DNA from: Haliotis rufescens
Taxonomy: Eukaryota
Length of the DNA stretch: 64,000 nt
Direction: 5' to 3'
Assembly: GCF_023055435.1 (NCBI RefSeq)
Contig: NW_025963890.1
Span: 50,778,001 to 50,842,000 of the forward strand
Shown: positions 1,535 through 48,016 of the stretch, one piece after another
Position numbering within the stretch: position 1 is the first letter of the stretch
Layout of the letters: each line of letters opens with the position of its first letter
The notes under the pieces: generated by a model
What the model was told of the DNA's origin: nothing
Seen by the model: the letters and a program-made list of their open reading frames with translations, nothing else
Database searches by the model: none
Translations under genes and position numbers: made by a program

Positions 1535-3606
1535 ACACGTTAGAGTGAGTGCAGCATGTAAGGGGAGTTAGTGCAACACTTTGTGGGAGTTAGTGCAACA
1601 CGCTGTGGGAGTTAGTGCACCTTGTTGGTGGAGTTAGAGCAACACGTTGGTGGAGTTAGTGCAACATGTTAGGGGAGTTAGTACAACATGTTAGTGGAGT
1701 TAGTGCAACATGTTAGGGGAGTTAGTGCAACAGGTTAGGGGAGTTAGTTCAACATGTTAGGGGAGTTAGTGCAACATGTTAGGGGAGTTAGTACAACATG
1801 TTAGAGGAGTTAGTGGAACATGTTAGGGGAGGTAGTGCAACACGTTAGGGGAGTTAGTGCAACACGTTAGGGGAGTTAGTGCAACATGTTAGTGGAGTAA
1901 GTGCAACACGTTAGGGGAGTTAGTGCAACATGTTAGGGGAGTTAGTGCAACACGTCAGGGGAGTTAGTGCAACATGTTAGGTGAGTTAGTGGAACATGTT
2001 AGGTGAGTTAGTGGAACATGTTAGGGGAGTTAGTGCAACATGTTAGTGGAGTTAGTGCAACATGTTAGTGGAGTTAGTGCAACATGTTAGGGGAGTTAGT
2101 GCAACATGTTAGGGGAGTTAGTGCAACACGTTAGGGGAGTTAGTGCAACATGTTAGGGGAGTTAGTGCAACATGTCAGGGGAGTTAGTGCAACATGTTAG
2201 GTGAGTTAGTGGAACATGTTAGGTGAGTTAGTGGAACACGTTAGGGGAGTTAGTGCAACATGTTAGTGGAGTTAGTGCAACATGTTAGTGGAGTTAGTGC
2301 AACACGTTAGGGGAGTTAGTGCAACATGTTAGGGGAGTTAGTGCAACGCGATAGGGGAGTTAGTGGAACATGTTAGGGGAGTTAGTGCAACACGTTAGGG
2401 GAGTTAGTGCAACACGTTAGGGGAGTTAGTGCAACACGTTAGGGGAGTTAGTGCAACATGTTAGGGGACTTAGTACAACATGTTAGTGGAGTTAGTGCAA
2501 CATGTTAGGGGAGTAAGTGCAACAAGTTAGGGGAGTTAGTGCAACATGTTAAGGGAGTTAGTGCAACACGTTATGGGAGTTAGTGCAACATGTTAGGGGA
2601 GTTAGTGCAACATGTTAGGGGAGTTAGTGCAACAAGTAAGTGGAGTTAGTGCACCGTGTTAGGGGAGTAAGTGCAACATGTTAGGGGAGTTAGTGCAACA
2701 CGTTATGGGAGTTAGTGCAACATGTTAGGGGAGTTAGTGCAACATGTTAGGGGAGTTAGTGCAACATGTTAGGGGAGTTAGTGCAACAAGTTAGTGGAGT
2801 TAGTGCACCGTGTTAGGGGAGTAAGTGCAACATGTTAGGGGAGTTAGTGCAACACGTTAGGGGAGTTAGTGCAACATGTTAGAGGAGTTAGTGCAACATG
2901 TTAGGGGAGTTAGTGCAACACGTTATGGGAGTTAGTGCAACATGTTAGGGGAGTTAGTGCAACATGTTAGGGGAGTTAGTGCAACAAGTTAGTGGAGTTA
3001 GTGCACCGTGTTAGGGGAGTAAGTGCAACATGTTAGGGGAGTTAGTGCAACACGTTAGGGGAGTTAGTGCAACATGTTAGGGGAGTTAGTGCAACATGTT
3101 AGGGGAGTTAGTGCAACATGTTAGGGGAGTTAGTGCAACAAGTTAGTGGAGTAAGTGCACCGTGTTAGGGGAGTAAGTGCAACATGTTAGGGGAGTTAGT
3201 GCAACACGTTAGGGGAGTTAGTGCAACATGTTAGAGGAGTTAGTGCAACATGTTAGGGGAGTTAGTGCAACACGTTATGGGAGTTAGTGCAACATGTTAG
3301 GGGAGTTAGTGCAACATGTTAGGGGAGTTAGTGCAACAAGTTAGTGGAGTTAGTGCACCGTGTTAGGGGAGTAAGTGCAACATGTTAGGGGAGTTAGTGC
3401 AACACGTTAGGGGAGTTAGTGCAACATGTTAGGAGAGTTAGTGCTACATGTTAGTGGAGGTAGAACAACACGTTAGAGGAGTTAGTACAACACGTTAGAG
3501 GAGTTAGTGCAACATGTTAGGGGAGTTAGTGCTACATGTTAGGGGAGTTAGTGCAACACGTTATGGGAGTTAGTACAACATGTTAGGGGAGTTAGTGCAA
3601 CACGTT
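1535..3606. repeat. 22-bp tandem satellite array 1 (GTTAGGGGAGTTAGTGCAACAY)
   Basis: Exact 22-nt period (e.g. gagttagt at 1741 and 1763); about 2.07 kb; no unique spacers. Confidence 0.97.
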
Positions 3607-4172: not shown

Positions 4173-4210
4173 CCATATGAGGGATACATTGACGACTTGG
4201 AGGTATAAAA
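4173..4210 (+). promoter_or_regulatory. Actin A core promoter: CArG-like box CCATATGAGG plus TATAAAA
   Basis: CArG-like box 4173-4182 (one mismatch to CC(A/T)6GG), TATA 4204-4210, about 80 nt upstream of the ATG; same arrangement at paralogs. Confidence 0.7.
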
Positions 4211-4285
4211 ATCCACCAGTCCTGACTGGTGCTATCAGCTTTAAAGCCCACAGAAGTGAAACACATTTTATCCATTTCTGCCAAA

Positions 4286-4411
4286 ATGTGTGACGACGAT
4301 GTTGCTGCGATGGTTATCGACAACGGCTCCGGCATGTGCAAGGCCGGGTTCGCCGGTGACGACGCCCCCAGAGCTGTCTTCCCCTCTATCGTTGGCCACC
4401 CAACACATCGG
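4286..4411 (+). CDS. act: Actin A (divergent), coding exon 1
   Basis: [42 protein letters not shown] followed by donor GTAAGT at 4412. Confidence 0.9.
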
Positions 4412-5847
4412 GTAAGTATTCTTTAAATGTGTGTGAAGGTTCTTGGACATTGCCATCACTGTTTACTAGTGAGCTATAGGTGTACAGGACCTCGTTAATA
4501 CGGACGGTGGGGTTCCAAGTGAAATCATCCCGTGTTATAGATGTCCGGATTAACGAGTCATTGTTATAAAGAGATGTTCTTTGTGTAAATGCAGACTGGT
4601 ATTGCCAAACAATCCTGAATTCAGGGTTCGGATTAATGAGATATGATTCTTTCTGGGTGTAATAACCGTCGCAGAGCAAAAGGCACCAACCAGCTCTCAC
4701 CAAGTAGTGACCGCGTCAACCTGGGGCCTGACTCTGTAGAAGTCGATGCAGACAAGTGAAGGTCGCCAGCTCGGAGCAATGTCATTATTTGTAGAAAACA
4801 TATAATGATAATTGTTTGTTAAGAAAGTTTTAACGCTCTCTCTTTGAAGGTGGCAATAATAATTATAACTTTGAAAGTTCCTGTGTTACTTATATTACTT
4901 ATAAAACTCGAAGTTCCTGTGTTACTTTTATTAAGTAATTGAGTTACAATTAACCAAAATCAGTTCTAACTGTACTTCTCAAAGAATGCATAGTAATTGA
5001 AATTGAAAAAGCAATTGTTTATATTGTGTGAAGACATGAACAAATTTCCTTTGCTATGCCCTTGGCATTCGGAAGGAAATGCCCCAGCATTAATTGAATT
5101 GTGAGATCATGTTTATTCTGTTGAATTTTATATACTGGCCTTTTCATATGAATCTAATGTTGATCTTTGATTTGTTAAAAGTCACATTCTTTCGCACATA
5201 AAAATGGACTTGAATCGAACCTGTTTTGTTTTGTAACCCACCATTTTCCCACTGAGCCATCCGGGCAGGTGATGATAGGGTGTTCAATCTTATATGTCAG
5301 AAGTTCAGTTGTGTGCATGCTGCCCGTTGTCTTTGTCTCGCACGCTTTTATCGAATTCCTATTATATCCTTTTCTATTGTTTCAATATAACATATCCTGG
5401 TTTTTTTCATTCTTTCTGGCATTTCTTTTAGACAGTTTATAAGTTGGATAAAAAGTCGCCCCAGTTTTGACTGAGAATGTAAGCTCGGGGCACTGGGATA
5501 TTAGGGCTTTCGTCCCTCCTCCACCGAGGAGGTGGTGTTAGTATTTTACTTCGAGGCCTTTCCCTGTCATCGAATTCGTTTTATACCGCTGTGACATTTC
5601 ACTGTAAGTTAACCCGATGTGTTCATATTCTTGTATTTAAACTGGTATGCATGCAGCCGATTGCTGTTTAACACACATTATGTCATTGTTGTAAGAGGTT
5701 AAATCGTCTGTTCTTACACCCAACTACAAGGTGATGTTAACAGATACATAATTACACGACAACAAAGAAGAAATGACATGAAATATTAAAAAACTGGTAT
5801 TTCTTTGTAGGCCAGCGAGTATTATTAGACAATAACCCGTGATTGTA

Positions 5848-6938
5848 TACTTAACAACAAAAGTTCCCGTGACATTGAATAAGATTTAATGCAAAGTTAT
5901 GTTTTTTACCAAATCTGAAACAATTTCGGTTTGCAACAGATTAAAGACACCTGTAAGTGTTCAAATGGTTTCATTCGCCATACTGATTTCGGAAAATGTG
6001 TGATTTCATAAAAAAAACCCATGCAAAAATGTCAATTTACAAATCAATAGCGATTTCCCTCTACCACTATCAAACGGGTCCTCTGTCTTGCTGTAATCCA
6101 ACCCCATACCATAACGCTGCCGCCCTCGAACCGATCTTCTTCTATGACACAATGATTGACGTAACGTTCACCTCGACGTCGGTACACTCGAATCCGTCCA
6201 TCGCTGTGGCTGAGGTGAAAACGAGACTCGTCAGTGAATAGAACTTGTCCCCACTGCATGGCCGTCCAGCGTAGACGCACATCTGTAGACGTGCTTGACG
6301 GTGGTTTCCTGTCAAAATGGGACGTCTGGCGGGTCTTCTGGCGACAATCCCTGCAAATCTGAGGCGACGACGTGACGATATTCGTCGGAGGCCAGGGATG
6401 CCTCTTGCAGTCACTGTTGCTGGCTGGAATCGATTTCGTAGGTGTGCTGTTCGAATCCAGTTGTCTTGTCGATTACTGGTTACGCGTGGCCTGCGTAATG
6501 GTCTCTGACTGCATTCGTCTGTTGCCAACGTTGCCATAAACGCCAAATGGTGTTTCTGTGGACGTTAAATTGTCTTGCAACATCACGTTGACTCGATCAC
6601 GCTTCAAGCAGACCAATGGCTCGCAGGGGCTTATTTCGGACAGGCGTGGCATTTCGTAATGTTGAATAATTGCGTAATTTTGCTGTTTTTCTGAGTGGTT
6701 GTTGTCAGCAAGATGCTAAACATTACATATGGAATCCCGTTAACGCACATGTTTTTATACCCATTCTTGGGTAGTGAAATGCATGGGGCTTGCATAAAAG
6801 TCAACTTTTGCATGGAATGCATGCTTTTCTGCAGCAGTTGCGTTTTTGTGACTTGATTCCATAGATGTACTACAATATTGTACTTGTTTGAAAAATACAC
6901 TAAAACATTGGTGTCACAGGAAGCTTTGTTGTTGAGTA
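5848..6938 (-). mobile_element. Tc1-family DNA transposon, internally deleted and frameshifted (intron of actin A)
   Basis: TIRs tacttaacaacaaaagttcccgtgac / gtcacaggaagctttgttgttgagta, TA flanks, FTDESRF and SVMVWG motifs; C-terminal catalytic region missing; same family as 21963-23487. Confidence 0.92.
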
Positions 6939-7099
6939 TATATTTTATTGAAAATAATTGTGAAATTCTGGTTCCAAAATGATGGTTGCGTTAATGTGAT
7001 GATGTAACTTATATTCACTTTCACACACAATTTTCTTGAAATTCTTGCAGTTACCAAGACAGAGACAATGAGTAAGTTTCACAAAAAAAAATGGAAAGG

Positions 7100-7342
7100 G
7101 GCTTTAGATCGTGGAGCTGCGTCCCTTGGGCACGCCAGAATCCTATGACCGTGAGTTTGAATTCCGGTTCGATATTTGTAGGTTTATCAGCATCATACCC
7201 TTGCTAGTGGGTTTCACCAAAGTGGTAAACGCCTGAGACTTGCATCACTTTCAGGATTTGCTCCAACATCAAACTGACACGCTGTGATATAACTTTAATA
7301 CTGTTCAAAGCGGTGTTATACCCAACTCACTCACTCACTCAC
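7100..7342 (+). mobile_element. Degenerate tRNA-derived SINE (family S2, long A-B box spacer)
   Basis: gcgtcccttgggcacgccaga core shared with 10044-10300; (ACTC)n tail. Confidence 0.65.
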
Positions 7343-7731
7343 ACGCCCCATTCTGTTCCTGAGTATATAGGCTGTATAGGTGTTGTGACGCGCCGTGGAG
7401 ATCGGACTTCTCAGCGTCAATTGAAAACGTCTGTTATTGACACTCTGATTTCATGTATAGAGTTTTAAATCTGTATATGTATCTCCCCAAACTGTGACTG
7501 GGGTTATTGAAGGGGGATTGAGTTATTTGCAGAAAAGGCTCAAGCCATTTAGTAGTTTCAGCACATTTGAATCATGTCCTGAACACACCACTTTTGCCAG
7601 CTACAATATGACATATTGGTCATTCTATTTTTTTTATTGTCAGTGGAGTACGGCTGTGATATTCACATGCAGGTTTGACAATGATAAGAAGTTATTGTAC
7701 AGAATATATATGTTGTCATCAATTTTTCCAG

Positions 7732-8730
7732 GGTGTGATGGTCGGTATGGGACGGGACAGCTACGTCGGTGACCAGGCTCAGTCAATGAGACATAATCTC
7801 ACCCTCAAGTACCCAATCAAGCATGGTATCGTCACCAACTGGGACGACATGGAGAAGATCTGGCATCACACCTACAACGAGCTCCGTGTGGCCCCAGAGG
7901 AGCACCCCGTCCTTCTGACTGAGGCTCCACTCAACCCCAAGGCCAACCGTGAAAAGATGACCAAGATCATGTTCGAGACCTTCAACTCTCCAGCTATGTA
8001 TGTGGCCATCCAGGCTGTTCTGTCTCTTCACGCATCTGGTCGTGTCACGGGTATTGTTCTTGACTCTGGTGATGGTGTCACCCACACTGTCCCCATTGAC
8101 GTGGGTTACGCCCTTCCGCACGCCATAACGAGTCTGGATCTTGCTGGTTGTGGCCTCACAGACTACCTCATTAGGATCCTGACTGAACGTGGTTACTCCT
8201 TCACCACCATTGCCGAACGAGAAATCGTCAGGGACATCAAGGAGAAGTTAGCTTACATTGCTTTAGACTTTGAACAGGAAATGCAGACTGTTGCCTCTTC
8301 CTCTTCATTGGAGAAGATCTACGAGCTTCCCGACGGTCAGGTCATCACCATTGGCAACGAGAGGTTCCGTTGTCCAGAGGCCCTCTTCCAGCCATCCTTC
8401 TTGGGTATGGAATCTGCTGGTATCCATGAAACAACATACAACTCCATCATGAAGTGTGATGTTGATATTCATAAAGACTTGTATGCCAACATTGTTCTCT
8501 CAGGAGGTACCACCATGTTCCCCGGTATCGCCGACAGAATGCAGAAGGAGATCACAGCCCTTGTTCCAGCATCAATGAAGATCAAGATCATCGCGCCTCC
8601 AGAGAGGAAATACTCCGTCTGGATCGGTGGCTCCATCCTTGCCTCTCTGTCCACCTTCCAGCAGATGTGGATCAGCAAGCAGGAGTACGATGAGTCCGGC
8701 CTATCCATTGTTCACAGGAAGTGTTATTAG
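7732..8730 (+). CDS. act: Actin A (divergent, 374 aa total), coding exon 2
   Basis: Acceptor tttttccag at 7731; open frame GVMVGMG...IVHRKCY*; two single-codon deletions (Q49/K50 region and F90), no stops. Confidence 0.88.
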
Positions 8731-9068
8731 GGTCTGAAGTTGGACACGATAGTGACATTTTAGCGAATACTTTTCATCATTGATAAGGCCACTATTAAAC
8801 ATTGTTCTTCTGATTGTTGTCCAAATCTGAAGATACGGAGTGCAACTGTTTTGTTATTGAAATAACTAAGTAAATTGCATCAGGAGCCTTTGTGTATTTA
8901 CTCACATGTTATCATTCATTTGGTATTGATGGCTTGATATGTATCGCACCTGTCATATACCAACAATACAGCTAAATATTTGTATTCATTGATACAGTAA
9001 CATATATTGGGTAACTTGTATTGGTGGAGATGGCTACACGTCAGCCCTTGTTGCTTGATAATACACAT

Positions 9069-9628
9069 TATTATGCCTCAATGTGAGATTGACCAATCAG
9101 TGAGCAAAACTACTAACCCCACATGAAACTGTATACCCTCAGTATAATCCAAGATGGTTGTTACTGACCTGAGACCGTATACCGTCAGTAACAGATTTTC
9201 CAACACCACCCTCACATATTTCACATGAAACTTCTGGCACCGAAATTCGTTATTTGACACTGTTGTGTGTTTTACTATCATTAACTGTGGCGTGCAAGGA
9301 CATTAATCTGTGTTTTAGATCACGTTCTTGACTTTATTGATAAAGATTATGGTTAAAAATTCAACATGGTTTGGCCTCTAAAGTTTGAAGAGTAGTCTCC
9401 CTTTGACCCTTAACCTTCAACGAGCTGTTGTAAGTGTATATGGATATGGATATCAGAGAGTGTAAACGTTTCGGCATCATAAATTCGTTATGGCGTCTTT
9501 AGTTGCTGTATACGGTGTCATATTAGGTTAGCAGAAAAATATTTGGCTCGACTCACGCCTCGCCCATTATTTTTTTCTGCTCATTTAATATAACACCCTA
9601 TACGGCAACTAAAGACACCATAACTAAA
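9069..9628. mobile_element. Insertion ending in a ~140-bp palindromic MITE-like hairpin (9487-9624)
   Basis: Absent from the paralogous site near position 88; gttatggcgtctttagttgctgtata...tatacggcaactaaagacaccataac inverted repeat. Confidence 0.7.
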
Positions 9629-9629
9629 A

Positions 9630-11130
9630 GAATGACATCCTTAACCTCCACTACATGTGGAAAATTGGAAAAACAAATATTTATTCACGCGAGAGAAAAA
9701 CGAGCAGACAGACAGACAGACATTCCTCCCAAACTTCATACATAGTTGGGCGTTTGGTTTGTACAGTCACCAAAACGTTTAATTTTTCCATTGAAATTTT
9801 GCACATTTTCACGTCGATGTAAAACGGGTTGTTCAAGTCAATATGATATTGACTGATTATTCATATACCAGGGTATGTTTGCGTGTTTCACGATGGAATA
9901 AGGAGAAACTGAATTATGAAGGTAGATATATTCATAAAAAGTAAACCAACACAAAATCACAAAAATGTGAAACTGTTGAAAAGGAAGGCGGTTTTATTCA
10001 TACTCCAGTTAATCGGTCAATTTAAAATAGTGTGAAACCGCAAGAGTGAGTGAGTGAATTGGTTTTAACGCCGCTTTTAACACTATTCGAGCTATATCAG
10101 GGCGTGTCAGCTTAATCTGGGAGGAAAGACCAAAGTGATACGGGTCTCAGACGAGAGACGGTAGGTGCTGACAAACCTAGAAACATAATCGGGGCGAACC
10201 GGGATTCGAACCCACAATCATAGGTTTCTGGTCTGCCCAAGGGACGCAACTCTGCACAGCGAATCGTGGCGCCTTAGACGACTGGGCCACCCGTACCCCC
10301 TCATACATGTATCACACAAAAAGAAAAAAAGAAAAGAAAAAAAAAAGATGTTGTAAAGGAAGGCGGTTTTATGTATACACCAGTTAATCGGTCAATGCAA
10401 AATCGTTGAACCGCTAGAGGCGTTCGTACAATCTGAAGCAGACGCAAGAGGCCTTCACGCATCACCGGCCAGCAGAGCATGTGACAAGTCGCGGTCCGCG
10501 CACAGGCTGAGACAGTGGGCGTCTTCTGTACACCTACAGGGGCTGAGGTCAGGTATGTTCCAAGAGGCAGGGAGAATGATATCGGGCTAGTTAGAACGAT
10601 GTTATACTTGGGTCATACATATTCGGCTGTACATAGTGGGCGATGTTCGGTATGTGTATGTCAGAGTCGCCTCCCTTACATGACCTACTTCTATGACATA
10701 TTTTATAACTTCCTACTTTGACCGCCTGTTTTCATGTCAGTGGTTCCCCAGCGACAAGATCGATGAGCCACATTCTTATTCTGTCACAGACTTCTATGAC
10801 ATATTTTATAACTTCCTACTTTGACCGCCTGTTTTCATGTCAGTGGTTCCCCAGCGACAAGATCGATGAGCCACATTCTTATTCTGTCACAGACACAGTG
10901 TTATATGCTTGGGACCGGTGTCACGACTTTACGTACAGCATCGTAACTACATTCACAAACGAGAACATGTTCAAAACACGGGAGTCCATATTAAGATTAT
11001 ATTTAGCAGGTGCCTCCCACTCAGTGGGGAAAGGATTGACAAGGGATTAGCTGAGAACGTCTCTTTGCAGGCCAGGCTTCTGACGACTGGGACCACCCCC
11101 CGAGGTGTTATAGGAGTTAGTGAAACACGT
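9630..11130 (+). repeat. Pre-satellite duplicated block, copy 2 (candidate promoter/non-coding exon of gene B)
   Basis: Homologous to 100-1340 and 52377-52935; donor-like gaggtcag|GTATGT near 10553; internal ~100-bp tandem duplication near 10690-10890. Confidence 0.85.
10044..10300 (-). mobile_element. tRNA-derived SINE (family S2)
   Basis: Minus strand has A box tggcccagtcgtctaagg, B box gggttcgaatccc and (ACTC)n tail. Confidence 0.8.
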
Positions 11131-11415
11131 TGGTGTGTTTGTTTGTTTATTTGTTTGTTTGGTTGTTGTTTAACGCCGCACTCAGCAATATTCCAGCCAT
11201 ATGACGGCAGTTAAATAATCGAGTCTGGACCAGATAACCAGTGACTGACATCATGTGCATCGATCCACGCAACTGGGATACGATGACATGCATCAACCAA
11301 GTCAGCGAGCCTGACCACCCGATCCCGTAAGTCGCCTCTTACGACAAGCATAGTCGCCTTTTACGACAAGAATGGGTTGCTGAAGACCTATTCTACCCCG
11401 GATCTTCACGAGTCA
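11131..11415 (-). mobile_element. S1 element inserted after the first satellite monomer
   Basis: Full-length copy, same insertion point as in arrays 1 and 3. Confidence 0.85.
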
Positions 11416-12982
11416 CACGTTAGAGTGAATGAGTGCAACATGGAGACGTTATGCAACCCGTTAGGGGAGTTAGTGCAACACGTTAGGGCAGTTAGTGCAA
11501 CACGTTAGGGGAGTTAGTGCAACATGTTAGGAGAGTTAGTGCAACATGTTAGTGGAGGTAGGGCAACATGTTAGGGGAGTTAGTGCAACACGTTAGGGGA
11601 GGTAGTGCAACATGTTAGTGGAGGTAGTGCAACACGTTAGGGGAGTTAGTGCTACATGTTAGGGGAGTTAGTGCAACACGTTAGGAGAGTTAGTGGAACA
11701 TGTTAGGGGAGTTAGTGCAACATGTTAGGGGAGTTAGTGCAGCATGTTAGGGGAGTTAGTGCAACACGTTAGGGGAGTTAGTGCAACACGTTAGGGGAGT
11801 TAGTGCAACACGTTAGGGGAGTTAGTCCAACATGTTAGGGGAGTTAGTGCAACACGTTAGGGGAGTTAGTGCAACACGTTAGGGGAGTAAGTGCAACATG
11901 TTAGGGGAGTTAGTGCAACATGTTAGGGGAGTTAGTGCAACACGTTAGGGGAGTAAGTGCAACATGTTAGGGGAGTTAGTGTAACACGTTAGTTGAGTTA
12001 GTGCAACATGTTAGGGGAGTTAGTGCAACACGTAAGGAGAGTTAGTGCAACATGTTAGGGGAGTAAGTGCAACACGTTAGGAGAGTTAGTGCAACATGTT
12101 AGGGGAGTTAGTGCAACATGTTAGGGGAGTTAGTGCAACATGTAAGGGGAGTTAGTGCAACATGTTAGGGGAGTTAGTGCAACATGTTAGGAGAGTTAGT
12201 GCAACATGTTAGGGGAGTTAGTGCAACATGTTAGGAGAGTTAGTGCAACATGTTAGGGGAGTTAGTGCAACATGTAAGGGGAGTTAGTGCAACATGTTAG
12301 GGGAGTTAGTGCAACATGTAAGGGGAGTTAGTGCAACATGTTAGGGGAGTTAGTGCAACACGTTAGGAGAGTTAGTACAACACGTTAGGGGAGGTAGTGC
12401 AACGCGTTAGGAGAGTAAGTGCAACACGTTAGGGGAGTTAGTGCAACATGTTAGGAGAGTTAGTGCAACGTGTTAGGATAGTAAGTGCAACACGTTGTGG
12501 GAGTTAGTGCAACACGTTAGTGGAGGTAGTGCAACATGTTAGGGGAGTTAGTGCAACATGTTAGGGGAGTTAGTACAACATGTTAAGGGAGTTAGTGCAA
12601 CACGTTAGGAGAGTTAGTGCAACATGTTAGGGGAGTTAGTACAACATGTTAGGGGAGTTAGGGCAACACGTTAGGGGAGTTAGTGCAACGTGTTAGGGGA
12701 GTTAGTGCAACATGTTAGGGGAGTTAGTGCAACACGTTAGGGGAGGTAGTGCAACATGTTAGGGGAGTTAGTGGAACATGTTAGGGGAGGTAGTGCAACA
12801 TGTTAGGGGAGTTAGTGCAACACGTTAGGGGAGTTAGTGCAACACGTTAGGGGAGTTAGTGCAACATGTTATAGGACTTAGTGCAACATTGTAAAGGAGT
12901 TAGTGCAACATGGTAAAGGAGTTAGTGCAACATGGTAAAGGAGTTAGTGCAACATGTTAGAGGAGTAAGTGCAACATGTTAA
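11416..12982. repeat. 22-bp tandem satellite array 2
   Basis: Same monomer as array 1; ends about 60 nt before the ATG of gene B. Confidence 0.97.
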
Positions 12983-13043
12983 GGCATGTTATGTGCCACA
13001 TACTAGTATACGGTTTGTCAATATTTTTTTGTTTTTCAGGACG

Positions 13044-13166
13044 ATGGCTGAATTATCTTCCCCTGTTGTCATGGACAACGGTTCGAGCACGAGCAGGGCG
13101 GGGTTTGCAGGAGCCTCCCAGCCGTCATGTGTCTTCCCGTCCATTGTCGGCAGGCCCAGGGGACAG
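13044..13166 (+). CDS. Actin-like gene B, coding exon 1 (highly divergent)
   Basis: [41 protein letters not shown]; acceptor tttttcag 4 nt before the ATG; GT at 13167 at the conserved 41/42 position (weak donor gtctaa). Confidence 0.8.
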
Positions 13167-14565
13167 GTCTAAAACCAACAAATATATTCTTGTATTTGTA
13201 CATTTGTACGCGCGGTAGGACAGGACACCCGGTGTCGTCATTGATTTTCAGTGATCCATTCGTGTAGTTATCACCGTTATTTTGGCAATGGAATATGTTT
13301 TTTCGGACAATCGAGACCCGTGTGTTGTTTTACGCCACAGTCGGCCATGTTCCAGCTGTATCGAGTGTGGACCAGGAAAATCTTATTTAGAATTTCCACA
13401 AGGCACCAGTAATGACAAAACTATACATGTGAACTGTTAAATAACTATAAGGGTCCTTACTTGAACAGAAGAAAAGTTTTGGTAGTGACTGGGTGAGTTT
13501 GTAACGCTGCACCATACAATGAAATATTGCGGTCCCATGTCATATTAGTCCCTTATCACATTGATCTGCAGCACGGAAACATTATCGTCAAATACAGTCA
13601 TTGTTGTAAAAAAATGATTAACGTAATCACAACGAGGACACCGCGGGTGTCATGGGTCAGGATATCCTGTACTTCCGGTAGTATTTGACACGTTGGAAGG
13701 TCAAGGTCATGTGTTTTGTCCATAGAGAATTCGAAAGTTATAATTATGGCAGTATGTTGTGGAAGTAGAGACAAAATGTTATTTATATTATTCATGTGTT
13801 TTACCCAGAAAGTTGTTTTGTTATTAGCTGAGTTTTTTTATGAATATGAAATCACTTTCTCGCTTTTGTTTACACGGCAGTAGAGTCCAGTCAAAAAAAT
13901 AAGAATCTCATTGGCAACCATGAACTTTCGGCAAGGTCACAATCTGTCAGGGAAATTTTGCTCATCCCCTCCATCAATTGGTCAAATTGTACTTACATAC
14001 AGAGTATTTGATTTTCTGCGAAAACGTAAGCTGTAACTTTGATCAAACAACAGTTCAGCACGTCTCCTATGACCCTCTTTGAACTTTTCAGTGAAAGAAC
14101 ATGCTCGATTGTACCTAAAAAGTTATGAAATGTAGACACCGAAAGTTGATTCAGCCGGAATTTTCGACAAAAAGGGAAAGTTGGATGTCATCCCTCTTGT
14201 CATACAGTCTTGTGGATATTTTTAGTTGTCTATACTCTGATACCTTTTGCATGATACAAATGAGGCAGTGTATTAGTCTGTTATATCCAGCTCAGTAGGG
14301 TAAATCAGTGGAAGGGAGTTGACATTTTGACCATTTTGAACCACAATGAATGCATGTTTTGAAGAGACGAGTAAAGATTGGACTGTGATTTCATGACAAA
14401 GCGAATGATGCTTAGACCTTGCCCTGGTGAATATGTTAAATTCTGATAAATTGTTGCTAACTGTTACATGTCGTCTCATGCCTAGGTCGTATATAACTGT
14501 ATACACATTTTAGTCGTGACATAATTATATTTACTGCCAGTATCATGATATCTTCATCATATGAA

Positions 14566-14725
14566 GACCCGTGAAGATTCCGGGGTAGAATAGGTCTTCA
14601 GCAACCCATGCTTGCCGTAAAAGGTGACTATGCTTGTCGTAAAAGGCGACTTACAGGATCGGGTGGTCAGGCTCGCTGAATATTGCTTAGTGCGGCGTTA
14701 ATCAACAAAGCAACCAACCAACCAA
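14566..14725 (+). mobile_element. S1 element, internally deleted
   Basis: gacccgtgaagattccggggtagaataggtcttcagc head joined directly to the aatattgcttagtgcggcgtt tail. Confidence 0.8.
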
Positions 14726-14759
14726 TCATCATATGAAATACAGACAATCTTCCTTCCAG

Positions 14760-15761
14760 GGCGTGATGGTCGGTATGGGACAGAAGGACAGCTACGTCGG
14801 TGACGAGGCTCAGTACAAGAAAGGTATCCTCACCCTCAAGTACCCCATCGAGCACGGTATCGTCACCAACTGGGACGACATGGAGAAGATCTGGCATCAC
14901 ACCTTCTACAACGAGCTCCGTGTTGATCCAGAGGAGCACCCCGTCCTCCTGACTGAGGCTCCCATGAACCCCAAGGCCAACCGTGAAAAGATGACCCAGA
15001 TCATGTTCGAGACCTTCAACACTCCCGCAATGTCTTTGGCCATCCAGGCTGTTCTGTCCCTGCATTCCTCTGGCCACAAGACGGGTATTGTTCTGGATTC
15101 CGGTGATGGTACAACACATGTTATTCCCATATATGAAGGATACTATTTGCCACACGCTGTTTGTAAGACGATAATATCGGGACGAGATATAACAGATCAC
15201 ATGCTTAAACTGCTCAACGACCGTGGATGCAACTTCACCACCCGTGCAGAGTATGCCATCGTCAGAGATATCAAAGAGACGCTCTGCTACGTGGCCTATG
15301 ACTACAAACACGAGCTGAATACGATGACCAAGTCTACCATAAACAAAACCTATATACAACCAGATGGGACGTTCACCACAGTTGGTGACGAACGCTTCAA
15401 GTGCCCAGAGGTGATTTTTAATCCTCTATTGATGGGCGTGGAAATGTCCGGGATACAGGATATTTTGTCAAGGTCGTTACAGATGTGTGACAGCTCTATC
15501 CATGGTCAGCTGTATGGCAACATAGCTTTGTGTGGAGGGTCGACACTTTTCCCAGGATTCTCTGACCGCCTTCGGAAAGAGATAGAAAATGTAGCACCTG
15601 CTGGAACTACCGTCAACGTGAGAGCCCCACCCCATGGACTCATGTCAGCGTGGGTGGGGGGCTCGATGAAGGCCGCCCTACCCTCCTTCATGGATGCTGT
15701 AATGACGAAGGATATGTACGATGAATCTGGACCATCTCTAGTCCATCGATGTTGTTTTTGA
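14760..15761 (+). CDS. Actin-like gene B (374 aa total), coding exon 2
   Basis: Acceptor ccttccag at 14759; uninterrupted ORF; H73, Q137, DSGDG and H161 retained; first ~90 codons conventional, remainder strongly diverged; ends HRCCF*. Confidence 0.88.
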
Positions 15762-16274
15762 TCATGTTTTGACTTTCTTTACAACTACGTAGAAAGTTGA
15801 ATTGTTTTGTTATTTCATACATATATTGTATACCTAATATGTAAAATATGTGTATATAGTGAGATATCATCATTGTTTTCGGTGGGGCACTGGTGTCCGT
15901 AATACATCCCTCAGACGTGTCAGTACTTTGATTGTGGGTTCAAAGGGAGGAGTGTTTGATCACACACCGGTCCCTTGATGCCCGTTGACTGACTTGATGA
16001 CTTTCCTCGTTGCTTAGATTATTTTTTTGAAATTTCGATCTCTTGAGAAACTTGAGAAAATGATTGGAAGTAACGATAAATTCGAGAAAATAATCGAAAT
16101 TACGAGAACATAATCGAAATAATGAGAGAAAATTCAATTACAAAATTGATATAACGAGGAAGTGACACCATTAGGTTTTCGTACAAAACGTCAAAGCCAG
16201 AGAATAATTGGTCCTGACTACTAGTATTAATGACAAGGCTCAGGCCATTTGACAGTTATAGCAAATTTGAATGC

Positions 16275-17036
16275 CAGATTATGTTCGAGACCTTCAACTC
16301 TCCACCTTTGTATGTGGCCATCCAGGCTAGTCTGTCTCTGTACGCTTCTGGTCCTACGACGGGCATTGCTTTTGATTTTGGTGATGGTTTCACCCGCACT
16401 ATGTCCATCTACGGTTTACACCCTTCCCACGCCATAGCGACACTGGATCTCGCTGGGCATCAACTGACAGAATACTTCATGAAGATCCTCACCCAGCGTG
16501 GTTCATCCTTCACCACCACTGCCAAGAGAGAAATTGCCAGGGACATCAAGGAAACACTTGCCCATGTGGCACTTGACATCGAACGGGGGATGGCTACTGT
16601 TGCGACTTCTTCCTCCGTGGAAAAGAGCTACGAGCTTCTCGACGATCATACCAGCACAATTGGTAACGAGAGGTTCCGTTGTCCAGAGGCTCTCTGCCAG
16701 CCATCCATTTTGGGCATGGAATCTGCTGGTGTCCACGAAACATCATATGGTTCCATCATGAAGTGTTATGTTGATATTCGTAAAGACCTGTACGCCAACA
16801 CTGTTCTCTCAGGAGGTACCACCATGTTCCCCCGTATCGCCGACAGAATGCAGAAGGAGATCACAGCCCTTGCTCGAGCAACAATGAAGATCGAGGTCAT
16901 TGCTCCTCCAGAGAGAAAATACTCCGTCTGGATCGGTGGCTCCAACCTTGCCTTGATGTCCACCTTCCAGCAGATGTGGATCAGCAAGCAGGAGTATGAT
17001 TCCGGCCGGTTCATTGCTCACAGAAAGTGTTTTTAG
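16275..17036 (+). pseudogene. act: Actin C, 5'-truncated (starts at Q121)
   Basis: Intron-like sequence (compare 7537-7575) fused directly to cagattatgttcgagacc; exon 1 and ~80 codons of exon 2 missing; many substitutions, frame still open. Confidence 0.85.
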
Positions 17037-18371
17037 GGACTGACGTTGCATACGATGAGGACATTTTGGCGAATTCTTTTCATCATTGATAAGACCACTA
17101 TTAAACATTGTTCTTCTGATCGTTTGTTCCAATGATGATTTATGTTCCTTTTTTTTGGATACATTTATGCAGCTTTTCTGGTTGTTTTAGTAGGATAAGT
17201 AACTTTGATTGCTATTTTGTTTTACATTTTAGCTGTTTATCTCTTGTCACAAGAGAGCGTATATATTCATCATCCCTTCCTTTGACATCCATATTGTGGC
17301 AAAGTAGGTACTTGATTATTAAAATATCAAAATATCCACCTCAATGTGTGTTTGTTAATATTCGAAAGAAAACCCCGATATACATGTACATAAACAAAAC
17401 TTAATGCATACATATTCAGATGAATCATATGAGAATATAAAGATGTTTTCAGGTGAACAGCTGACTTGCCTTTGCATGTGTTTATGACGGGTGCCACCGG
17501 TGGGGCAGGATACGCTCACCTTTTCGCGAACACCAGGTATCATCACTATTTGATAGTGATTCATAAACACATGCTCATGATATAGTCGGAATCGTACAAT
17601 CGACTCTGCTTTATGCAGAGATTTCTATTGGATGTGGAAAGGGTTTTGTCGCTTTACTTATTATTGTCAACGCATTCACATATACACCACATCCTGTTTG
17701 GGAGTGAAGCTTATGGTTATTGATCTGGTACAGAGATTATATCTCAATTATCGATACAACACTACACATTTACACCTTCGGTATGTTACCAACATGATAC
17801 CTTACACTGATCGCTGCATACCCGTTCAATCAATCCACTTGTATACGTGGTATTTGTGGCGTCAACTCCGGCAACAGACTAGTTGATTACTAGTATTACT
17901 GAAACAGGTATCAAAGTTCCTTTAACCCGGTTGTAGTGATTCATATTACTAGCCAATATCGTCGGAAAACGACGTCAAGCAATCAAAGTAACCTGATGAC
18001 CCGATTCAATTTAGTCGTCTCCAACAACAAGTAATACAATAATTGGGACCCACGAAACCCACAAGCATAAACATGATGCTGTTAGCGAATCTGGGATTCT
18101 GAGCGAATCCTTGCACGGATAAGGGGCGCACTCTGCACAGCGAAACACGCGTCGTCATAGACCGCGGGGATACCAATGTCAAAAGGAATTGTCCACAAAT
18201 GTATGGAAACTATACAGTCTGTACAGTGATAGTCTCCCTGGCACAACGACAGCCGACTGTGTAACCGCGGGTGTATTATCCCTGACTGTCGGTCAGTGTA
18301 AACAGTAAACAATAAGTGTCAGGATAACATTATATCTCCTACGCTCATGCAGCTTCCTTTAAGTACGCCCT

Positions 18372-20212: not shown

Positions 20213-20248
20213 ATGTGTGACGAAGATATCGCTGCGTTGGTTGTGGAC
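20213..20248 (+). pseudogene. act: Actin D stub: first 12 codons ([12 protein letters not shown])
   Basis: 5'UTR and codons match actin H (55058), then the sequence switches to the upstream region of actin A (compare 3671). Confidence 0.85.
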
Positions 20249-20601
20249 ACAGTGACACCGGCTGGGTTTTCAAATAGGTGGCAGTACAGTTTTCTATTCA
20301 CGTGTATAAATCTTTGCTATATGAATAACATATTCTTATTGAACAAGAAATACTTAAGCACTGTTTTGTGACGAGATTTTTCTATTTTATTAGGGTTAAA
20401 TGATAAACAACATATGTAAACGATTTGCTTTGAGCGTTTTTTTAATAAAATTTAACCAGTGACCATCTCCTGTAATCGTATCTGGTGATTGTGATTATTA
20501 ACACTGAAATAGTGTTGACTGTCACGAAGAAACTTAACCAAGGCTCCGCTCGGATTTCACAAAGACCGTATACATGTAGACGCGACACTTGTGTCTGTTT
20601 T

Positions 20602-21962: not shown

Positions 21963-23487
21963 TAAACTCAACAACAAAAGTTCCCGTGACACCAATATTT
22001 TAGTTTATATTTCAAACAAGTAAAGTTTGTTTTTCAATTTTGTAGTACATGTATTGAATCAAGTCACAAAACGCACCTGCTACAGAAAATCATGCATACC
22101 ATGCAAAAGTTGACTTTTATGCAAGCCCCATGCATTTCACTACCCAAGAATGGGTATAAAAACATGTGCGTTAACGGGATTCCATATGCATTGTTTAGCA
22201 TCGTGCTGACAACCACTCAGAAAAACAACAAAATTACGCAATTATTCAACATTACGAAATGCCACGCCTGTCCGAAAATGAGCGTCTGTCAGCCATTGGT
22301 ATGCTTGAAGCAGGATCGAGTCAACGTGATGTTGCAAGACAATTAAACGTCCACAGAAAAACAATTTGGTGTCCACAGAAACACCATTTGGTGTTTATGG
22401 CAACGTTGGCAACAGGCGAATGCAGTCAGAGACCATCCTCAGAGTGGCAATAACCAATAATCGACAAGACAACTGGATTCAAACAACACACCTACGAAAT
22501 CGATTCCAGCCAGTAACAGTGACTGCGAGAAGCATCCCTGGCCTTCGAAGAATATCTTCACAAACCGTACGTCGCCGCCTCAGATGTGCAGGGACTGTCG
22601 CCAGAAGACCCACCAGACGTCCCATTTTGACAGGCAACCACCGTCAAGCACGTCTACAGTGGTGCAGACAGCTTCTACGCTGGACGGCCATGCAGTGGGG
22701 ACAAGTTCTATTCACTGACGAGTCTCGTTTTCACCTCAGCCACAGCGATGGACGGATTCGAGTGTACCGACGTCGAGGTGAACATTACGTCAATAATTGT
22801 GTCATGGAAGAAGATCGGTTCGGGGGCTCCCTCGTTATGGTATGGGGTGGGATTACAGCAAGACAGAGGACCCGTTTGCTAGTGGTAGAGGGAAATCTCA
22901 ATGGACAGCGCTACTGCGACGAGATCATCAGCCCTGTTGTTCTACCGTTTTTGCGTCGTCGTGGCCCAGGCATTACCTTTCAACATGACAACACCCGGCC
23001 TGATATTGCTCGACTTGTTCAGGATTCTCTTCAACAAAACAACGTGAATGTCATCCCCTGGCCGACTCGCGCCCCTGATCTCTCACCAATCGAGCACACA
23101 TGGGATGAGATGGATCGGCGCCTTCGACGTCAACCACGTGTTCCACAGACACTCCAGGAACTTCGAAACATGCTCCAGCAGATATGGACAGATGTCTCAC
23201 AGGACCTTGTGCGACGCCTGGTCCATTCCATGAGACGAAGATATGTTGCTTGCATCGCAACCAGAGGTGGACACACACGCTATTGTTTTGTAATTTGACA
23301 TTTTGGCATGTTCATGTTTTTTTTATATGAAATCATGCATTTTCTGAAGTCAGTATGGCAAATTAAACCATTTGAACACTTACAGGAGTCTTTTATCTGT
23401 TGCAAACCGACATTGTTTCAGATTGATAAAAAACATAACTTTGCATTAAATCTTATTCAATATCACAGGGACTTTTGTTGTTCAGCA
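21963..23487 (+). mobile_element. Tc1-family transposon, near full length, frameshifted DD34E transposase (22259-23298)
   Basis: TIRs at both ends; MPRLSENERLSAIGMLEAG start, FTDESRF, QHDN-34aa-E(PIEHTW); short tandem duplication near 22350-22392 breaks the frame; empty site in the actin H intron near 56560. Confidence 0.95.
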
Positions 23488-24337: not shown

Positions 24338-25414
<1,077 letters not shown>

Positions 25415-36001: not shown

Positions 36002-37137
36002 TACTCACACGCTAAAGAAACGCAAGTGGTTTTAAGCAAATAGGTAACAAACACGGAACCATAAATTGATACGAGTTTTAGCATGTAGTGAAGCCTGATG
36101 GTGTTATCAATATTTTTGCATGCATTTTGGAAGCCCCGAGTAAAAACGCAACATAAAAAACGAATCGTCAAAACGCACCATTTCAATGAATATGTGGGTA
36201 TTCATGCACCAATTTCTCGCGAAACCGAAAATGCACGAACTGTCACGAACTGTAGTGGGTATAAAACTGTGGCCGATTCTTGGACCTACCACCCCTTGGT
36301 CAACAATGCCACGCCTAACTCAAATTCAGAGAAACCAGGCTATCGGACGTTTGGAAGCTGGAGAGTCTGTCCAAGATGTTGCCCGTCATTTCAACGTTAA
36401 CATAACCACAATTTACCGTATCCTGCATCGGTACAATGCTACACAGACGACAGATGACCTTCCTCGGAGCGTGGGTCATGATATGGGCAGGGATTGGACT
36501 TGGACCCATGTGCTTTCTGAATATTGGTCAAGGTCGGGGACACGTCGTCACTGCTCATCGGTATATCGACTAAGTGATCAGACCCCACGTTGTTCCATTT
36601 TTTGCACAACATCAACAACACATTTTCCAGCAGGACAACGCTCGTCCCCATGTTGCCAGAGCTACCATAGCCTTTCTGCAACAACACAACATCCGTGTTC
36701 TACCGTGGTCAGCCCTCAGCCCTGATCTGAACCCCATCGAACACTTGTGGGATGAGGTTCAAAGGCGTCTGCACAATGTGCGCCCAATCCCTACAACTGC
36801 CGATGAACTACGCACAGCTGCTCTGGACGTGTGCAGGAGGATCACTAGGGCCTTCACAAATCGCCTGATCCACTCAATGTACAGGAGATGTGTGGCAGCG
36901 ATCAATGCTAATGGTGGTCACACCTGGTATTGACTGACATTTTGGGCATTGACCCGAAACTGTGTAAGCTCTTAACATTTGAAAAAACCCAATTATGTCA
37001 TCTGCCTTTTAATCCATTAAACTGTGTTCAGTCAAATGTTTGTCAATCTTGCCCTATTAGTATTTCTTGTTTTTACTGTTGAAAATAAATAACATGTATA
37101 CTGCATACTCGACTTGCGTTTCTTTTGCGTGTGACTA
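36002..37137 (+). mobile_element. Tc1-family transposon, internally deleted
   Basis: TIRs tactcacacgctaaagaaacgcaagt / acttgcgtttcttttgcgtgtgacta, TA flanks; MPRLTQIQRNQAIG N-terminus and QQDNARPH...PDLNPIEHLW C-terminus, first catalytic D region missing. Confidence 0.92.
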
Positions 37138-45670: not shown

Positions 45671-45796
45671 CAGTTGGACCGCAACGTTTCTGCGCTGGTT
45701 ATCGACAACGGCTCTGGCATGTGTAAGGCTGGGTTCGCCGGTGACGACGCCCCCAGAGCTGTCTTCCCCTCTATCGTCGGACGCCCCAAACATGAT
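45671..45796 (+). pseudogene. act: Actin G exon 1, start codon lost
   Basis: [42 protein letters not shown]|GTAATT; no ATG at the homologous position; first in-frame Met is M16 at 45719. Confidence 0.8.

Positions 45797-46996: not shown

Positions 46997-48016
<1,020 letters not shown>

What the first reader, a model, noticed from the sequence alone, without database searches (positions are those of the whole stretch)
13044..15761. Chimeric actin-like gene: old divergent scaffold with a recently converted conventional segment
Seen: exon 1 and codons after ~15110 are strongly diverged (no acidic N-terminus, [27 protein letters not shown] end, AT-richer codons). In contrast, 14760 to ~15025 is nearly identical to neighbouring actins even at synonymous sites (only S60Y, R62K, A97D, L110M). 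The ORF has no stop despite the divergence. Inference: a long-maintained lineage-specific actin-related protein whose D-loop/subdomain-2 region is overwritten by gene conversion. That could keep it able to dock on conventional filaments by one face only (capper or nucleator-like).
Basis: partly seen in the sequence, partly recalled or inferred. Interest (0 to 1): 0.8.

Follow-up and report, generated by a model that had tools for sequence, protein, structure and literature searches.

The report
Mosaic divergent actin gene in abalone
An old, fast-evolving actin-like gene of abalone carries a roughly 260-350 base stretch that still matches the animal's ordinary actin genes, most likely through repeated copying from them; this is a clear example of a known process, not a new kind of system.

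Summary
The gene has exon 1 at 13044-13166 and exon 2 at 14760-15761. It is intact and encodes exactly the RefSeq Haliotis rufescens protein "actin-85C-like".

- **Conventional-like stretch:** codons 42-128 differ from conventional actin copies at 10-14 of 261 bases (dS 0.11-0.41).
- **Divergent parts:** exon 1 (dS 1.0-1.5) and codons 161-375 (285 of 642 bases differ, dS saturated) are old. GC3 falls from 0.80 to 0.51.
- **Control:** a true conventional actin with an identical protein segment has dS 1.34 there. Synonymous constraint therefore cannot explain the match.

DNA exchange with conventional actins is well supported. It is not one recent event. Orthologs in H. cracherodii, H. rubra and H. 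asinina (five copies) share the mosaic. Across the eight sequences, codons 42-132 have no fixed family-specific residue but 22 variable sites; codons 133-375 have 68 and 66.

Scallop proteins may belong to the same family. The gene also sits inside a conventional actin repeat unit, followed by a truncated conventional exon 2. A structural-chimera origin is therefore not excluded.

The capper idea is untested.

The parts
8979..11447 (+). Spacer upstream of the gene, collinear with the spacers upstream of conventional actin units at 1-1542 and 52378-53208
   Evidence: BLAST within the window: 80-94% identity to unit A and 90-92% to unit F.
11448..13001 (.). 22-bp G-rich minisatellite of about 70 copies that ends 42 bases before the ATG. 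The same array lies upstream of conventional units at 1543-3606 and 53209-54594.
   Evidence: Tandem Repeats Finder; BLAST.
13002..13043 (+). Short unique stretch ending in an acceptor-like tttttttgtttttcag (ends at 13039) just before GACG-ATG. The conventional CArG/TATA promoter found at this place in units A and F is absent.
   Evidence: Sequence read directly. The 5'UTR intron is an inference.
13044..13166 (+). Exon 1, 41 codons, divergent ([20 protein letters not shown]...)
   Evidence: Translation; Pfam actin match; dS 1.05-1.5 and 62-68% base identity to conventional exon 1; identical in H. cracherodii.
13167..14759 (+). Intron at codon 41/42. It is single copy except for dispersed repeats at about 14032-14362 and 14566-14725.
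   Evidence: No homology to introns of other actin copies; own-genome DNA search. An inverted repeat pairs 11302-11402 with 14579-14679.
14760..15018 (+). Exon 2, codons 42-128: core tract of conventional-actin DNA (D-loop, subdomain 2, core of subdomain 1)
   Evidence: 10-14 differences in 261 bases to conventional copies; dS median 0.22; GC3 0.80; 0 of 76 informative codons absent from the conventional pool. The gene sits inside the conventional polytomy in the segment tree.
15019..15110 (+). Transition, codons 129-158: conventional-like codons interrupted by family-specific residues (S133, L134; H143, S144, H147, K148)
   Evidence: Alignment. In codons 135-154, 0 of 17 informative codons are absent from the conventional pool. 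S133, S144 and K148 are shared by all Haliotis orthologs.
15111..15761 (+). Exon 2, codons 159-375 plus TGA: old divergent part
   Evidence: About 45% base differences; dS saturated; dN 0.47; GC3 0.51; terminal branch 1.4 changes per site. Single copy in the genome.
15762..16273 (+). Unique 3' flank or 3'UTR, containing a short dispersed repeat at about 16004-16188
   Evidence: Own-genome DNA search; no match in other actin loci.
16274..17132 (+). 5'-truncated conventional actin pseudogene: exon 2 from base 237 (codon 120/121) to the stop, plus about 95 bases of 3'UTR. It has frameshifting indels.
   Evidence: BLAST: 82-85% identity to conventional copies. Homology starts sharply at 16274 for all copies. 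The 3'UTR homology is only to copies of the local cluster.

Best explanation
This is a functional, old and fast-evolving non-canonical actin paralog of abalone. The first third of its exon 2 is repeatedly overwritten by interlocus (ectopic) gene conversion from the conventional actin genes on the same chromosome.

The tract is bounded on both sides. On the 5' side homology stops at the intron. On the 3' side the sequence has diverged too far to pair. Within the transition zone, selection keeps family-specific residues (133-134, 143-148) as islands.

The process sustains itself. The converted part stays similar enough to be converted again. Exon 1 and codons 159-375 have escaped conversion.

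- Shown: the segmental difference in age, the conventional origin of the DNA, and the sharing of the mosaic across the genus.
- Inferred: the mechanism (conversion rather than crossover), its recurrence, and the function.

The protein is predicted to fold as an actin with phosphate loop 2 intact. Its barbed-end groove, subdomain 3/4 contacts, hydrophobic plug and adenine-side residues are altered. It is unlikely to behave as an ordinary filament subunit.
For: Segment ages in this genome:
- dS against the clustered conventional copies is 0.22 (0.11-0.41) for codons 42-128, 1.05-1.5 for exon 1, and above 2.4 or not computable for codons 161-375.
- Control: conventional actin L004 has an identical protein in codons 42-128 (dN 0.000) but dS 1.34 there; L002 has 0.60. 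Synonymous sites of this segment are therefore free to drift.
- GC3 is 0.80 versus 0.51 within one exon. This rules out gene-wide codon bias.

Trees:
- In the codon 42-132 tree the target has a branch of 0.035 inside the conventional polytomy. In the codon 161-375 tree its branch is 1.4 and it lies outside.
- The AU test rejects a clade of the target with its best segment-1 matches in segment 2 (p = 0.0097).

Genus level, protein only:
- In codons 42-132, 0 sites are fixed-different from conventional actin in all eight Haliotis sequences, against 22 variable sites. In codons 133-375 the counts are 68 and 66 (p = 9.6e-7).
- The five H. asinina copies vary at 11/91 versus 9/243 sites (p = 0.008). 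Their segment-1 grouping conflicts with their segment-2 groupings.
- Conventional-like codons surround residues conserved in the family at 133-148.

Function retained:
- The frame is intact in 12 sequences of 4+ species. The neighbouring conventional fragment has frameshifts at only 16% divergence.
- AlphaFold model of the H. cracherodii ortholog: pLDDT 87.6. TM-score is about 0.9 to solved actins.
Against: - No ortholog DNA could be fetched. The decisive test was not run: whether segment 1 groups by species or by orthology.
- The four private residues (Y60, K62, D97, M110) are shared with H. cracherodii. Position 60 is never Ser in any ortholog. Complete overwriting has therefore not happened since that split, and any later exchange must be patchy or countered by selection.
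- The locus context fits a structural origin as well. The upstream spacer and minisatellite are conventional-type. A conventional exon 2 remnant starts at base 237, close to where the core tract ends at base 259.
- Introns of most conventional copies do not align with one another either. A tract that starts exactly at the exon edge is therefore not specific evidence.
- Expression was not verified.
Confidence: 0.68

Rival explanations
1. Structural chimera. A conventional actin repeat unit was rebuilt in one complex event (template switching or illegitimate recombination) with pieces of a divergent actin gene. On this reading the conventional-like start of exon 2 is the resident unit's own sequence, not a later conversion tract. 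The truncated exon 2 at 16274 is the displaced remainder.
For: - The locus reads as alternating blocks. There is a conventional-type spacer and minisatellite up to 13001 (90-92% identical to unit F). A divergent block follows at 13002-14759, then conventional-like 14760-15018/15110, then divergent 15111-16273. It ends with conventional exon 2 from base 237 plus its 3'UTR at 16274-17132.
- The core tract (bases 1-259 of exon 2) and the remnant (bases 237-1002) together make almost exactly one conventional exon 2.
- The conventional promoter that lies between minisatellite and ATG in units A and F is missing here.
- The three conventional-like blocks have divergences of the same order, about 0.08-0.2.
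Against: - The same protein junction (Y133S) occurs in H. cracherodii, H. rubra and H. asinina. An abrupt switch also follows residue 133 in scallop proteins. The flanking conventional blocks are only 8-17% diverged, so they look far younger than a genus-old event unless they too are homogenised.
- Conventional-like codons run on to about codon 154. They overlap the remnant by about 115 bases and enclose conserved family residues. That looks like patchy conversion, not one clean breakpoint.
- No second copy of the divergent parts exists in the genome to serve as a source.
- A breakpoint coincidence within about 40 bases of a 1-kb exon has a chance of roughly 0.08.
Confidence: 0.17
2. No DNA exchange. 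The segment is simply the most constrained part of an old paralog, at the protein level and at synonymous sites (codon bias or an RNA element).
For: - Residues 70-130 are the most conserved part of scallop and other divergent actin-like proteins as well.
- Conventional copies have somewhat lower dS in this segment than further on (0.35 versus 0.56).
Against: - Conventional actins L004 and L002 have the same protein segment but dS of 1.34 and 0.60 there. The target has 0.22.
- GC3 changes from 0.80 to 0.51 inside one exon.
- The segment is not strongly constrained in this family. 22 of 91 sites vary within the genus, and H. cracherodii has five extra changes in 49 codons.
Confidence: 0.03
3. 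Assembly mis-join or collapsed paralogs. The conventional stretch was put into the divergent gene by the assembler.
For: The region lies in a tandem array of similar genes.
Against: - Proteins predicted from assemblies of three other Haliotis species have the same junctions and the same four private residues or their own variants.
- The tract carries private substitutions found in no conventional copy.
- Contig sets of 8 studies hold the divergent 3' part.
Confidence: 0.01
4. A decaying pseudogene whose open frame survives by chance or through occasional conversion.
For: - Several neighbours look degenerate: in-frame deletions in unit A; no start codon and an early stop in unit E.
- The conventional promoter is missing.
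- Expression is unverified.
Against: - There is no stop or frameshift in 374 codons, although the divergent part (codons 161-375) differs at about 45% of bases. The adjacent true pseudogene has frameshifts at 16% divergence.
- 68 family-specific residues are fixed across four species.
- dN of 0.47 against saturated dS.
- Phosphate loop 2, Q137 and H161 are kept.
- The actin fold is predicted with confidence.
Confidence: 0.04

Closest known systems
Interlocus (ectopic) gene conversion among tandem paralogs, with tracts limited by divergence and selection
   Same: A sharp segmental drop in dS, discordant segment trees, donors on the same chromosome, and islands of paralog-specific residues kept inside converted DNA. 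The general effects are described for Caenorhabditis paralogs (PMC3966223, seen by title and abstract only).
   Different: The recipient is not a near-identical duplicate. It is a paralog about 50% diverged in protein over two thirds of its length. The same segment appears to be kept conventional across a whole genus. Non-reciprocity was not shown.
Lineage-restricted non-canonical actin paralogs or Arps (Drosophila Arp53D, PMC8291977; mammalian ACTL7A, PMC9976968)
   Same: An actin-fold protein derived from or close to actin. It evolves fast, is restricted in taxonomic range, and lacks the acidic N-terminus and many filament contacts.
   Different: No orthology to them: the sampled ARP-T-like proteins (the testis-Arp group among the hits) form a separate clade. 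Tissue of expression is unknown here. Those proteins are not reported, as far as I found, to carry a segment homogenised with conventional actin.
Conventional molluscan actin (the neighbouring genes)
   Same: Same intron position (41/42). Pfam actin domain (E = 2.5e-101). 94.5% protein identity in residues 42-132. All 60 best solved-structure matches are actins.
   Different: 52% identity in residues 133-375. G15S, M16T, K336L, Y143H, L346K, M355A, D288S, R290H and changes in the hydrophobic plug. No CArG/TATA promoter at the usual place.
Scallop divergent actins (Pecten maximus 'actin-3-like' P0402, Argopecten irradians 'actin-5-like' P0423)
   Same: Shared states: GSST-RAG (G15S, M16T), Q263N, K336L, V339A, I369L and APPH..SAW.GGSM. 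There is a conventional-like block at about residues 62/70-133, followed by an abrupt switch. They are sister to the Haliotis clade in the tree of residues 133-375.
   Different: Clade support is only 94/77 and both branches are long. In scallops residues 42-61 are divergent and residues 181-215 are conventional-like. No DNA was available.

Membership tests
Actin family (Pfam PF00022) | Significant match to the family profile over the whole domain | tested here: met
   Exon 2: E = 2.5e-101, 339.7 bits (cut-off 27). Exon 1: E = 1.1e-9, 37.8 bits.
Actin family (Pfam PF00022) | Actin fold with four subdomains | tested here: met
   AlphaFold model of the H. cracherodii ortholog: pLDDT 87.6, pTM 0.83, low confidence only in the D-loop. 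Foldseek TM-score 0.86-0.94 to solved actins.
Actin family (Pfam PF00022) | Nucleotide-binding residues (phosphate loops 1 and 2, adenine side) | tested here: inconclusive
   D11, S14, Q137, D154-G158, H161, K213, E214 and G301-G302 are kept. G15S, M16T, K18R, V159T, M305L, R335G, K336L and Y337M are changed. The residue roles come from general knowledge of actin, not from a test here.
Conventional actin | Very high identity to other actins along the whole length, and an acidic N-terminus | tested here: not met
   63% identity over exon 2 and 52% in residues 133-375. The N-terminus is MAELSSP.
Known Arp subfamilies sampled (Arp1/centractin, Arp2, ARP-T1/T2, ACTL9) | Placement inside the subfamily clade | tested here: not met
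   In trees of residues 133-375 the Haliotis clade (100/100) stands apart from the Arp1-like, ARP-T-like, Arp2 and ACTL9 rows. The 60 best solved-structure matches are all actins. Arp3-Arp10 were not sampled in the trees.
Interlocus gene conversion | Significant segmental heterogeneity of synonymous divergence, with a change point | tested here: met
Interlocus gene conversion | Discordant phylogenies of the segments | tested here: met
   (AU p = 0.0097).
Interlocus gene conversion | Not explained by constraint on synonymous sites | tested here: met
   The L004 and L002 controls; the GC3 shift.
Interlocus gene conversion | Non-reciprocal transfer rather than crossover or insertion; recurrence in separate lineages | not testable with these tools
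The genome search tool reports no relatives of this genome in its collection, and the other contig collections hold only viral, metagenome, bacterial and archaeal DNA.
Molluscan divergent-actin family with the scallop proteins | Monophyly with P0402, P0423 and the second half of P0041, plus shared derived residues | tested here: inconclusive
   Clade support is 94/77. Shared residues are listed. Some of them (M305L, I309F, M313L) also occur in Arp1-like and ARP-T-like proteins.

The most novel reading that the evidence does not exclude
An old molluscan family of non-canonical actins (abalone and scallops) keeps one defined module in step with the species' own conventional actins. The module is the D-loop, subdomain 2 and the core of subdomain 1. 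Recurrent gene conversion maintains it, while selection fences off the rest of the protein. The contact face towards ordinary actin would then co-evolve with it automatically. The protein would act at filament ends, for example by adding to a barbed end through a conventional pointed face and presenting a non-conventional barbed face.
Probability: 0.12. Interest if true: 0.65.

Novelty: new member of a known kind. Interest (0 to 1): 0.4.

Why it matters
This is a clean natural case of how far gene conversion reaches once paralogs have diverged. One exon holds DNA of very different ages side by side, and conserved paralog-specific residues survive inside converted DNA.

For actin biology it flags a family of non-canonical actins that is annotated but not described. 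The family occurs in four abalone species, with five copies in H. asinina, and possibly in scallops. Its filament-contact surfaces are remodelled on one side only, which gives a testable protein.

It is also a warning for phylogenies of mollusc actins. Trees built from different parts of exon 2 give opposite answers.

Tried and rejected
- **Ortholog DNA.** Segment-wise dS between species could therefore not be computed.
- **Reads.** They were used only in my own local alignment statistics on data already held.
- **Run search.** It listed holders of the divergent 3' part in 8 studies. Several are small contig sets guessed to be RNA. This is only a hint of expression, because the list is selected for holders.
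- **Large representative search**. It found nothing above 55% identity to the divergent part. It cannot resolve this family, because members cluster with conventional actin at the 50% level.
- **Earlier findings by words**. Nothing.
- **Literature**. No paper on this gene or on conversion among abalone actins.
- **Intron ends.** A 23-base similarity (20 matches) between the intron ends of the target and of copy L002 was too weak to name a donor.
- **Scallop fusion protein P0041.** Its second half starts at residue 131, which first looked like a shared breakpoint. It appears instead to come from cryptic splice sites between tandem genes (C|GTAAAG at codon 289/290, CTCCAG|CT at codon 131), so I dropped it as evidence.
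- **M47K as an ancestral state reverted by conversion in H. rufescens.** Parsimony does not favour it.
- **Joined gene model.** The exon 1 + exon 2 join was not sent to any search or fold tool. The exons were searched apart. The identical RefSeq protein was compared only in local scripts. The H. cracherodii ortholog was folded instead.
Full report
**What is there.** The window is a tandem array of actin genes on contig C112 (50.78-50.84 Mb) of a 1.33-Gb genome. All copies lie on the + strand, with one intron at codon 41/42.

The gene of the finding has exon 1 at 13044-13166 (41 codons, GT at 13167). Its intron ends with AG at 14758-14759. Exon 2 runs 14760-15761 (333 codons plus TGA). Both exons match Pfam actin.

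The conceptual product is identical to a RefSeq protein of Haliotis rufescens, 'actin-85C-like' XP_046330778.2. The genome is therefore red abalone or something indistinguishable from it. The gene is annotated, but I found no paper on it.

I searched the exons apart. I did not send the joined model to any search or fold tool.

I compared exon 2 with 27 other actin copies taken from the same genome.
- In codons 42-128 it differs at 10-14 of 261 bases from the best copies. In codons 161-375 it differs at 285-289 of about 640 (Fisher p = 1e-35 to 3e-39).
- Among codons that encode the same residue, none of 76 in codons 42-128 uses a codon absent from the conventional copies. After that point 36 of 126 do.
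- The best change point lies between codons 128 and 130 (permutation p <= 5e-5). A second plateau runs to about codon 154, with 0 of 17 such codons in 135-154.
- GC3 falls from 0.80 to 0.51.
- The only residues in 42-128 that differ from conventional copies are Y60, K62, D97 and M110.

**Conventional DNA, not constraint.** Nei-Gojobori dS against 20 clustered conventional copies:

| Segment | dS |
|---|---|
| Codons 42-128 | median 0.22 (0.11-0.41) |
| Exon 1 | 1.05-1.5 |
| Codons 161-375 | above 2.4 or not computable |

The decisive control is L004. It is a true conventional actin at 25.27 Mb whose protein is identical in codons 42-128 (dN 0.000). Its dS there is 1.34; copy L002 has 0.60. Synonymous sites of this segment are therefore free to change. 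The target's segment belongs to the pool of copies that are kept alike.

In a tree of codons 42-132 the target sits in the conventional polytomy with a branch of 0.035. In a tree of codons 161-375 it has a branch of 1.4 and lies outside. The AU test rejects joining it there with its best segment-1 matches (p = 0.0097).

The match is to nearly all conventional copies, not just the neighbours. The best are at 49.48 and 50.87 Mb, then copies of the 2.4-Mb cluster.

**Not an assembly error and not a pseudogene.**
- Proteins predicted from H. cracherodii (P0001), H. rubra (P0002) and five H. asinina genes show the same mosaic. The switch is at Y133S. The H. asinina genes lie on one contig with consecutive accession numbers, so they are probably tandem.
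- All have open frames. 68 positions in residues 133-375 are fixed in all eight Haliotis sequences and differ from conventional actin.
- The true pseudogene next door has frameshifts at only 16% divergence.
- A model of the H. cracherodii ortholog folds confidently as actin: pLDDT 87.6, pTM 0.83, low only in the D-loop. It superposes on solved actins at TM-score about 0.9.

**Timing: not one recent event.** H. cracherodii shares Y60, K62, D97 and M110, so that state is older than the split of the two species.

Across the eight Haliotis sequences, residues 42-132 contain no position that is fixed and different from conventional actin. Yet 22 of 91 positions vary. Residues 133-375 have 68 fixed and 66 variable positions (p = 9.6e-7). 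The segment is not strongly constrained in this family, but it has no old family-specific changes. This is what repeated resetting to the conventional sequence would produce.

The five H. asinina copies vary at 11/91 sites in this segment against 9/243 elsewhere (p = 0.008). Their grouping there conflicts with the groupings further on.

In H. rufescens, conventional-like codons also surround residues that the whole family keeps (S133, S144, K148). This looks like patchy conversion opposed by selection.

**Relatives.** The divergent part is single copy in the genome; the next best match is 50% identical. Word-based searches found only the Haliotis proteins above 50% identity. The scan of all representatives found nothing above 55%, but it cannot separate this family from actin.

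All 60 best solved-structure matches are actins. In trees of residues 133-375 the Haliotis clade (100/100) is separate from the Arp1-like, ARP-T-like, Arp2 and ACTL9 rows. It is sister to three scallop proteins at 94/77.

The scallop proteins share GSST-RAG, Q263N, K336L, V339A, I369L and APPH..SAW.GGSM. They also have a conventional-like block at about residues 62/70-133, followed by an abrupt switch. The family may therefore predate the split of gastropods and bivalves. Both branches are long, however, and no scallop DNA was available.

- Upstream: the 4 kb upstream (8979-13001) is collinear with the spacers upstream of conventional units A and F. Identity is 90-92% to F and 80-94% to A. This stretch includes a 22-bp minisatellite of about 70 copies (11448-13001; also at 1543-3606 and 53209-54594).
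- Promoter: in units A and F a CArG box and a TATA box lie between the minisatellite and the ATG, with no 5'UTR intron. In the target only 42 bases lie there, and they end in an acceptor-like tttttttgtttttcag. The conventional promoter is missing. The start of transcription is unknown.
- Downstream: after 512 unique bases comes a conventional exon 2 that starts sharply at its base 237 (window 16274). It runs through the stop into about 95 bases of local-cluster 3'UTR, at 82-85% identity and with frameshifts.

The locus thus alternates conventional and divergent blocks. The core conventional tract (bases 1-259 of exon 2) is nearly complementary to the remnant (bases 237-1002). This keeps open a structural origin by template switching or illegitimate recombination.

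I rate that origin lower for four reasons:
- The junction is shared across the genus, while the flanking conventional blocks are young-looking.
- Conventional-like codons extend about 115 bases past base 237.
- There is no second source copy of the divergent parts in the genome.
- The coincidence of breakpoints has a chance of roughly 0.08.

**Function (inference only).** I mapped the changes on residues known to form filament contacts; the residue roles are general knowledge of actin.

| Region | State in the target |
|---|---|
| D-loop | Identical to conventional actin |
| Residues 61-65 | Only R62K |
| Barbed-end groove | Y143H, A144S, R147H, T148K, L346K, M355A, W356V |
| Subdomain 3 | D288S, R290H, T324G |
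| Subdomain 4 | T203R, E241I, Q246T |
| Hydrophobic plug | Q263N, S265L, F266L, M269V |
| Adenine side | R335G, K336L |

However, the orthologs change the D-loop itself: M47K in H. cracherodii and H. asinina; M44I, M47V and Q49K in H. rubra. The conventional D-loop of H. rufescens may therefore be a by-product of conversion rather than something selected.

**Limits.**
I used them only in local statistics.
- Expression rests on a hint. Small contig sets, guessed to be RNA, hold 65-95% of the sampled words of the divergent 3' part.

**Verdict.** The event is better described as long-standing, probably recurrent, segment-limited conversion in a genus-wide gene family. It is a new member of known kinds (ectopic gene conversion; non-canonical actin paralogs) and of moderate interest.

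Noticed in passing
window 1543-3606, 11448-13001, 53209-54594: Three arrays of the same 22-bp G-rich minisatellite (63-94 copies, 83-90% matches). Each lies upstream of an actin unit (A, the target, F) and causes the strong GC skew of those stretches. Units D and E have none.
   Followed up: partly
window 11302-11402 and 14579-14679 (also 11150-11193 / 14678-14721): A 101-base inverted repeat, 95% complementary. It brackets the minisatellite, exon 1 and most of the intron of the target. The same element lies just upstream of the minisatellites of units A and F and in introns of other actin copies, so it is probably a dispersed MITE/SINE-like repeat.
   Followed up: partly
window 16274-17132: A 5'-truncated conventional actin pseudogene. 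It starts at base 237 of exon 2, has frameshifting indels and keeps the local-cluster 3'UTR. An ORF of 268 aa spans it (16230-17036).
   Followed up: yes
window 54946-54990 and 4174-4215: Conventional units F and A have a CArG-like box (CCATATAAGG / CCATATGAGG) and a TATA box about 70-110 bases upstream of the ATG, with no 5'UTR intron. The target lacks this promoter.
   Followed up: partly
window 20213-20340: A second exon-1-like copy ([12 protein letters not shown]..., then out of frame) lies about 500 bases upstream of the exon 1 of unit D at 20715.
   Followed up: no
window 45689-48019 (unit E) and 4286-8730 (unit A): Unit E has no ATG at the exon 1 position, Asn instead of Gly at codon 42, and a stop before the last two codons. 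Unit A has in-frame deletions and ends HRKCY. The odd features of A (PIDVGY, HRKCY) recur in an H. cracherodii protein (P0383), so the A type is kept across species.
   Followed up: partly
proteins P0041, P0356-P0368, P0381, P0383, P0389: Many mollusc 'actin' models of about 534 aa join residue 289 of one actin to residue 131 of the next. The join fits cryptic splice sites in conventional actin (C|GTAAAG at codon 289/290, CTCCAG|CT at codon 131), so these are probably read-through models across tandem genes. The target has lost that acceptor (ACT CCC GCA).
   Followed up: partly
G000:C112:50884854-50885477 and 50902719-50903342 (L028, L027): Two more divergent actin genes 43-60 kb downstream of the window. 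They are about 69% identical to conventional actin over exon 2. Divergence is spread more evenly along the exon than in the target (dS above 1 in both segments).
   Followed up: partly
window 22366-23298 (+), 49842-50792 (-), 26375-27019 (-), 36186-36725 (+): ORFs that look like Tc1/mariner-type transposases and fragments of them, lying between the actin units. This is judged from the translations only; no family scan was run.
   Followed up: no
window 56069-56240: An assembly gap (172 N) between exon 1 and exon 2 of unit F. It was left as it is.
   Followed up: no
L025 (G000:C112:50777111-50777746) and window 24410-25414: The conventional neighbour just upstream of the window has K62 with the same AAA codon as the target. 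That neighbour and unit D have N97 (AAT), one step from the target's D97 (GAT). This may be leakage from the divergent gene into its neighbours.
   Followed up: no
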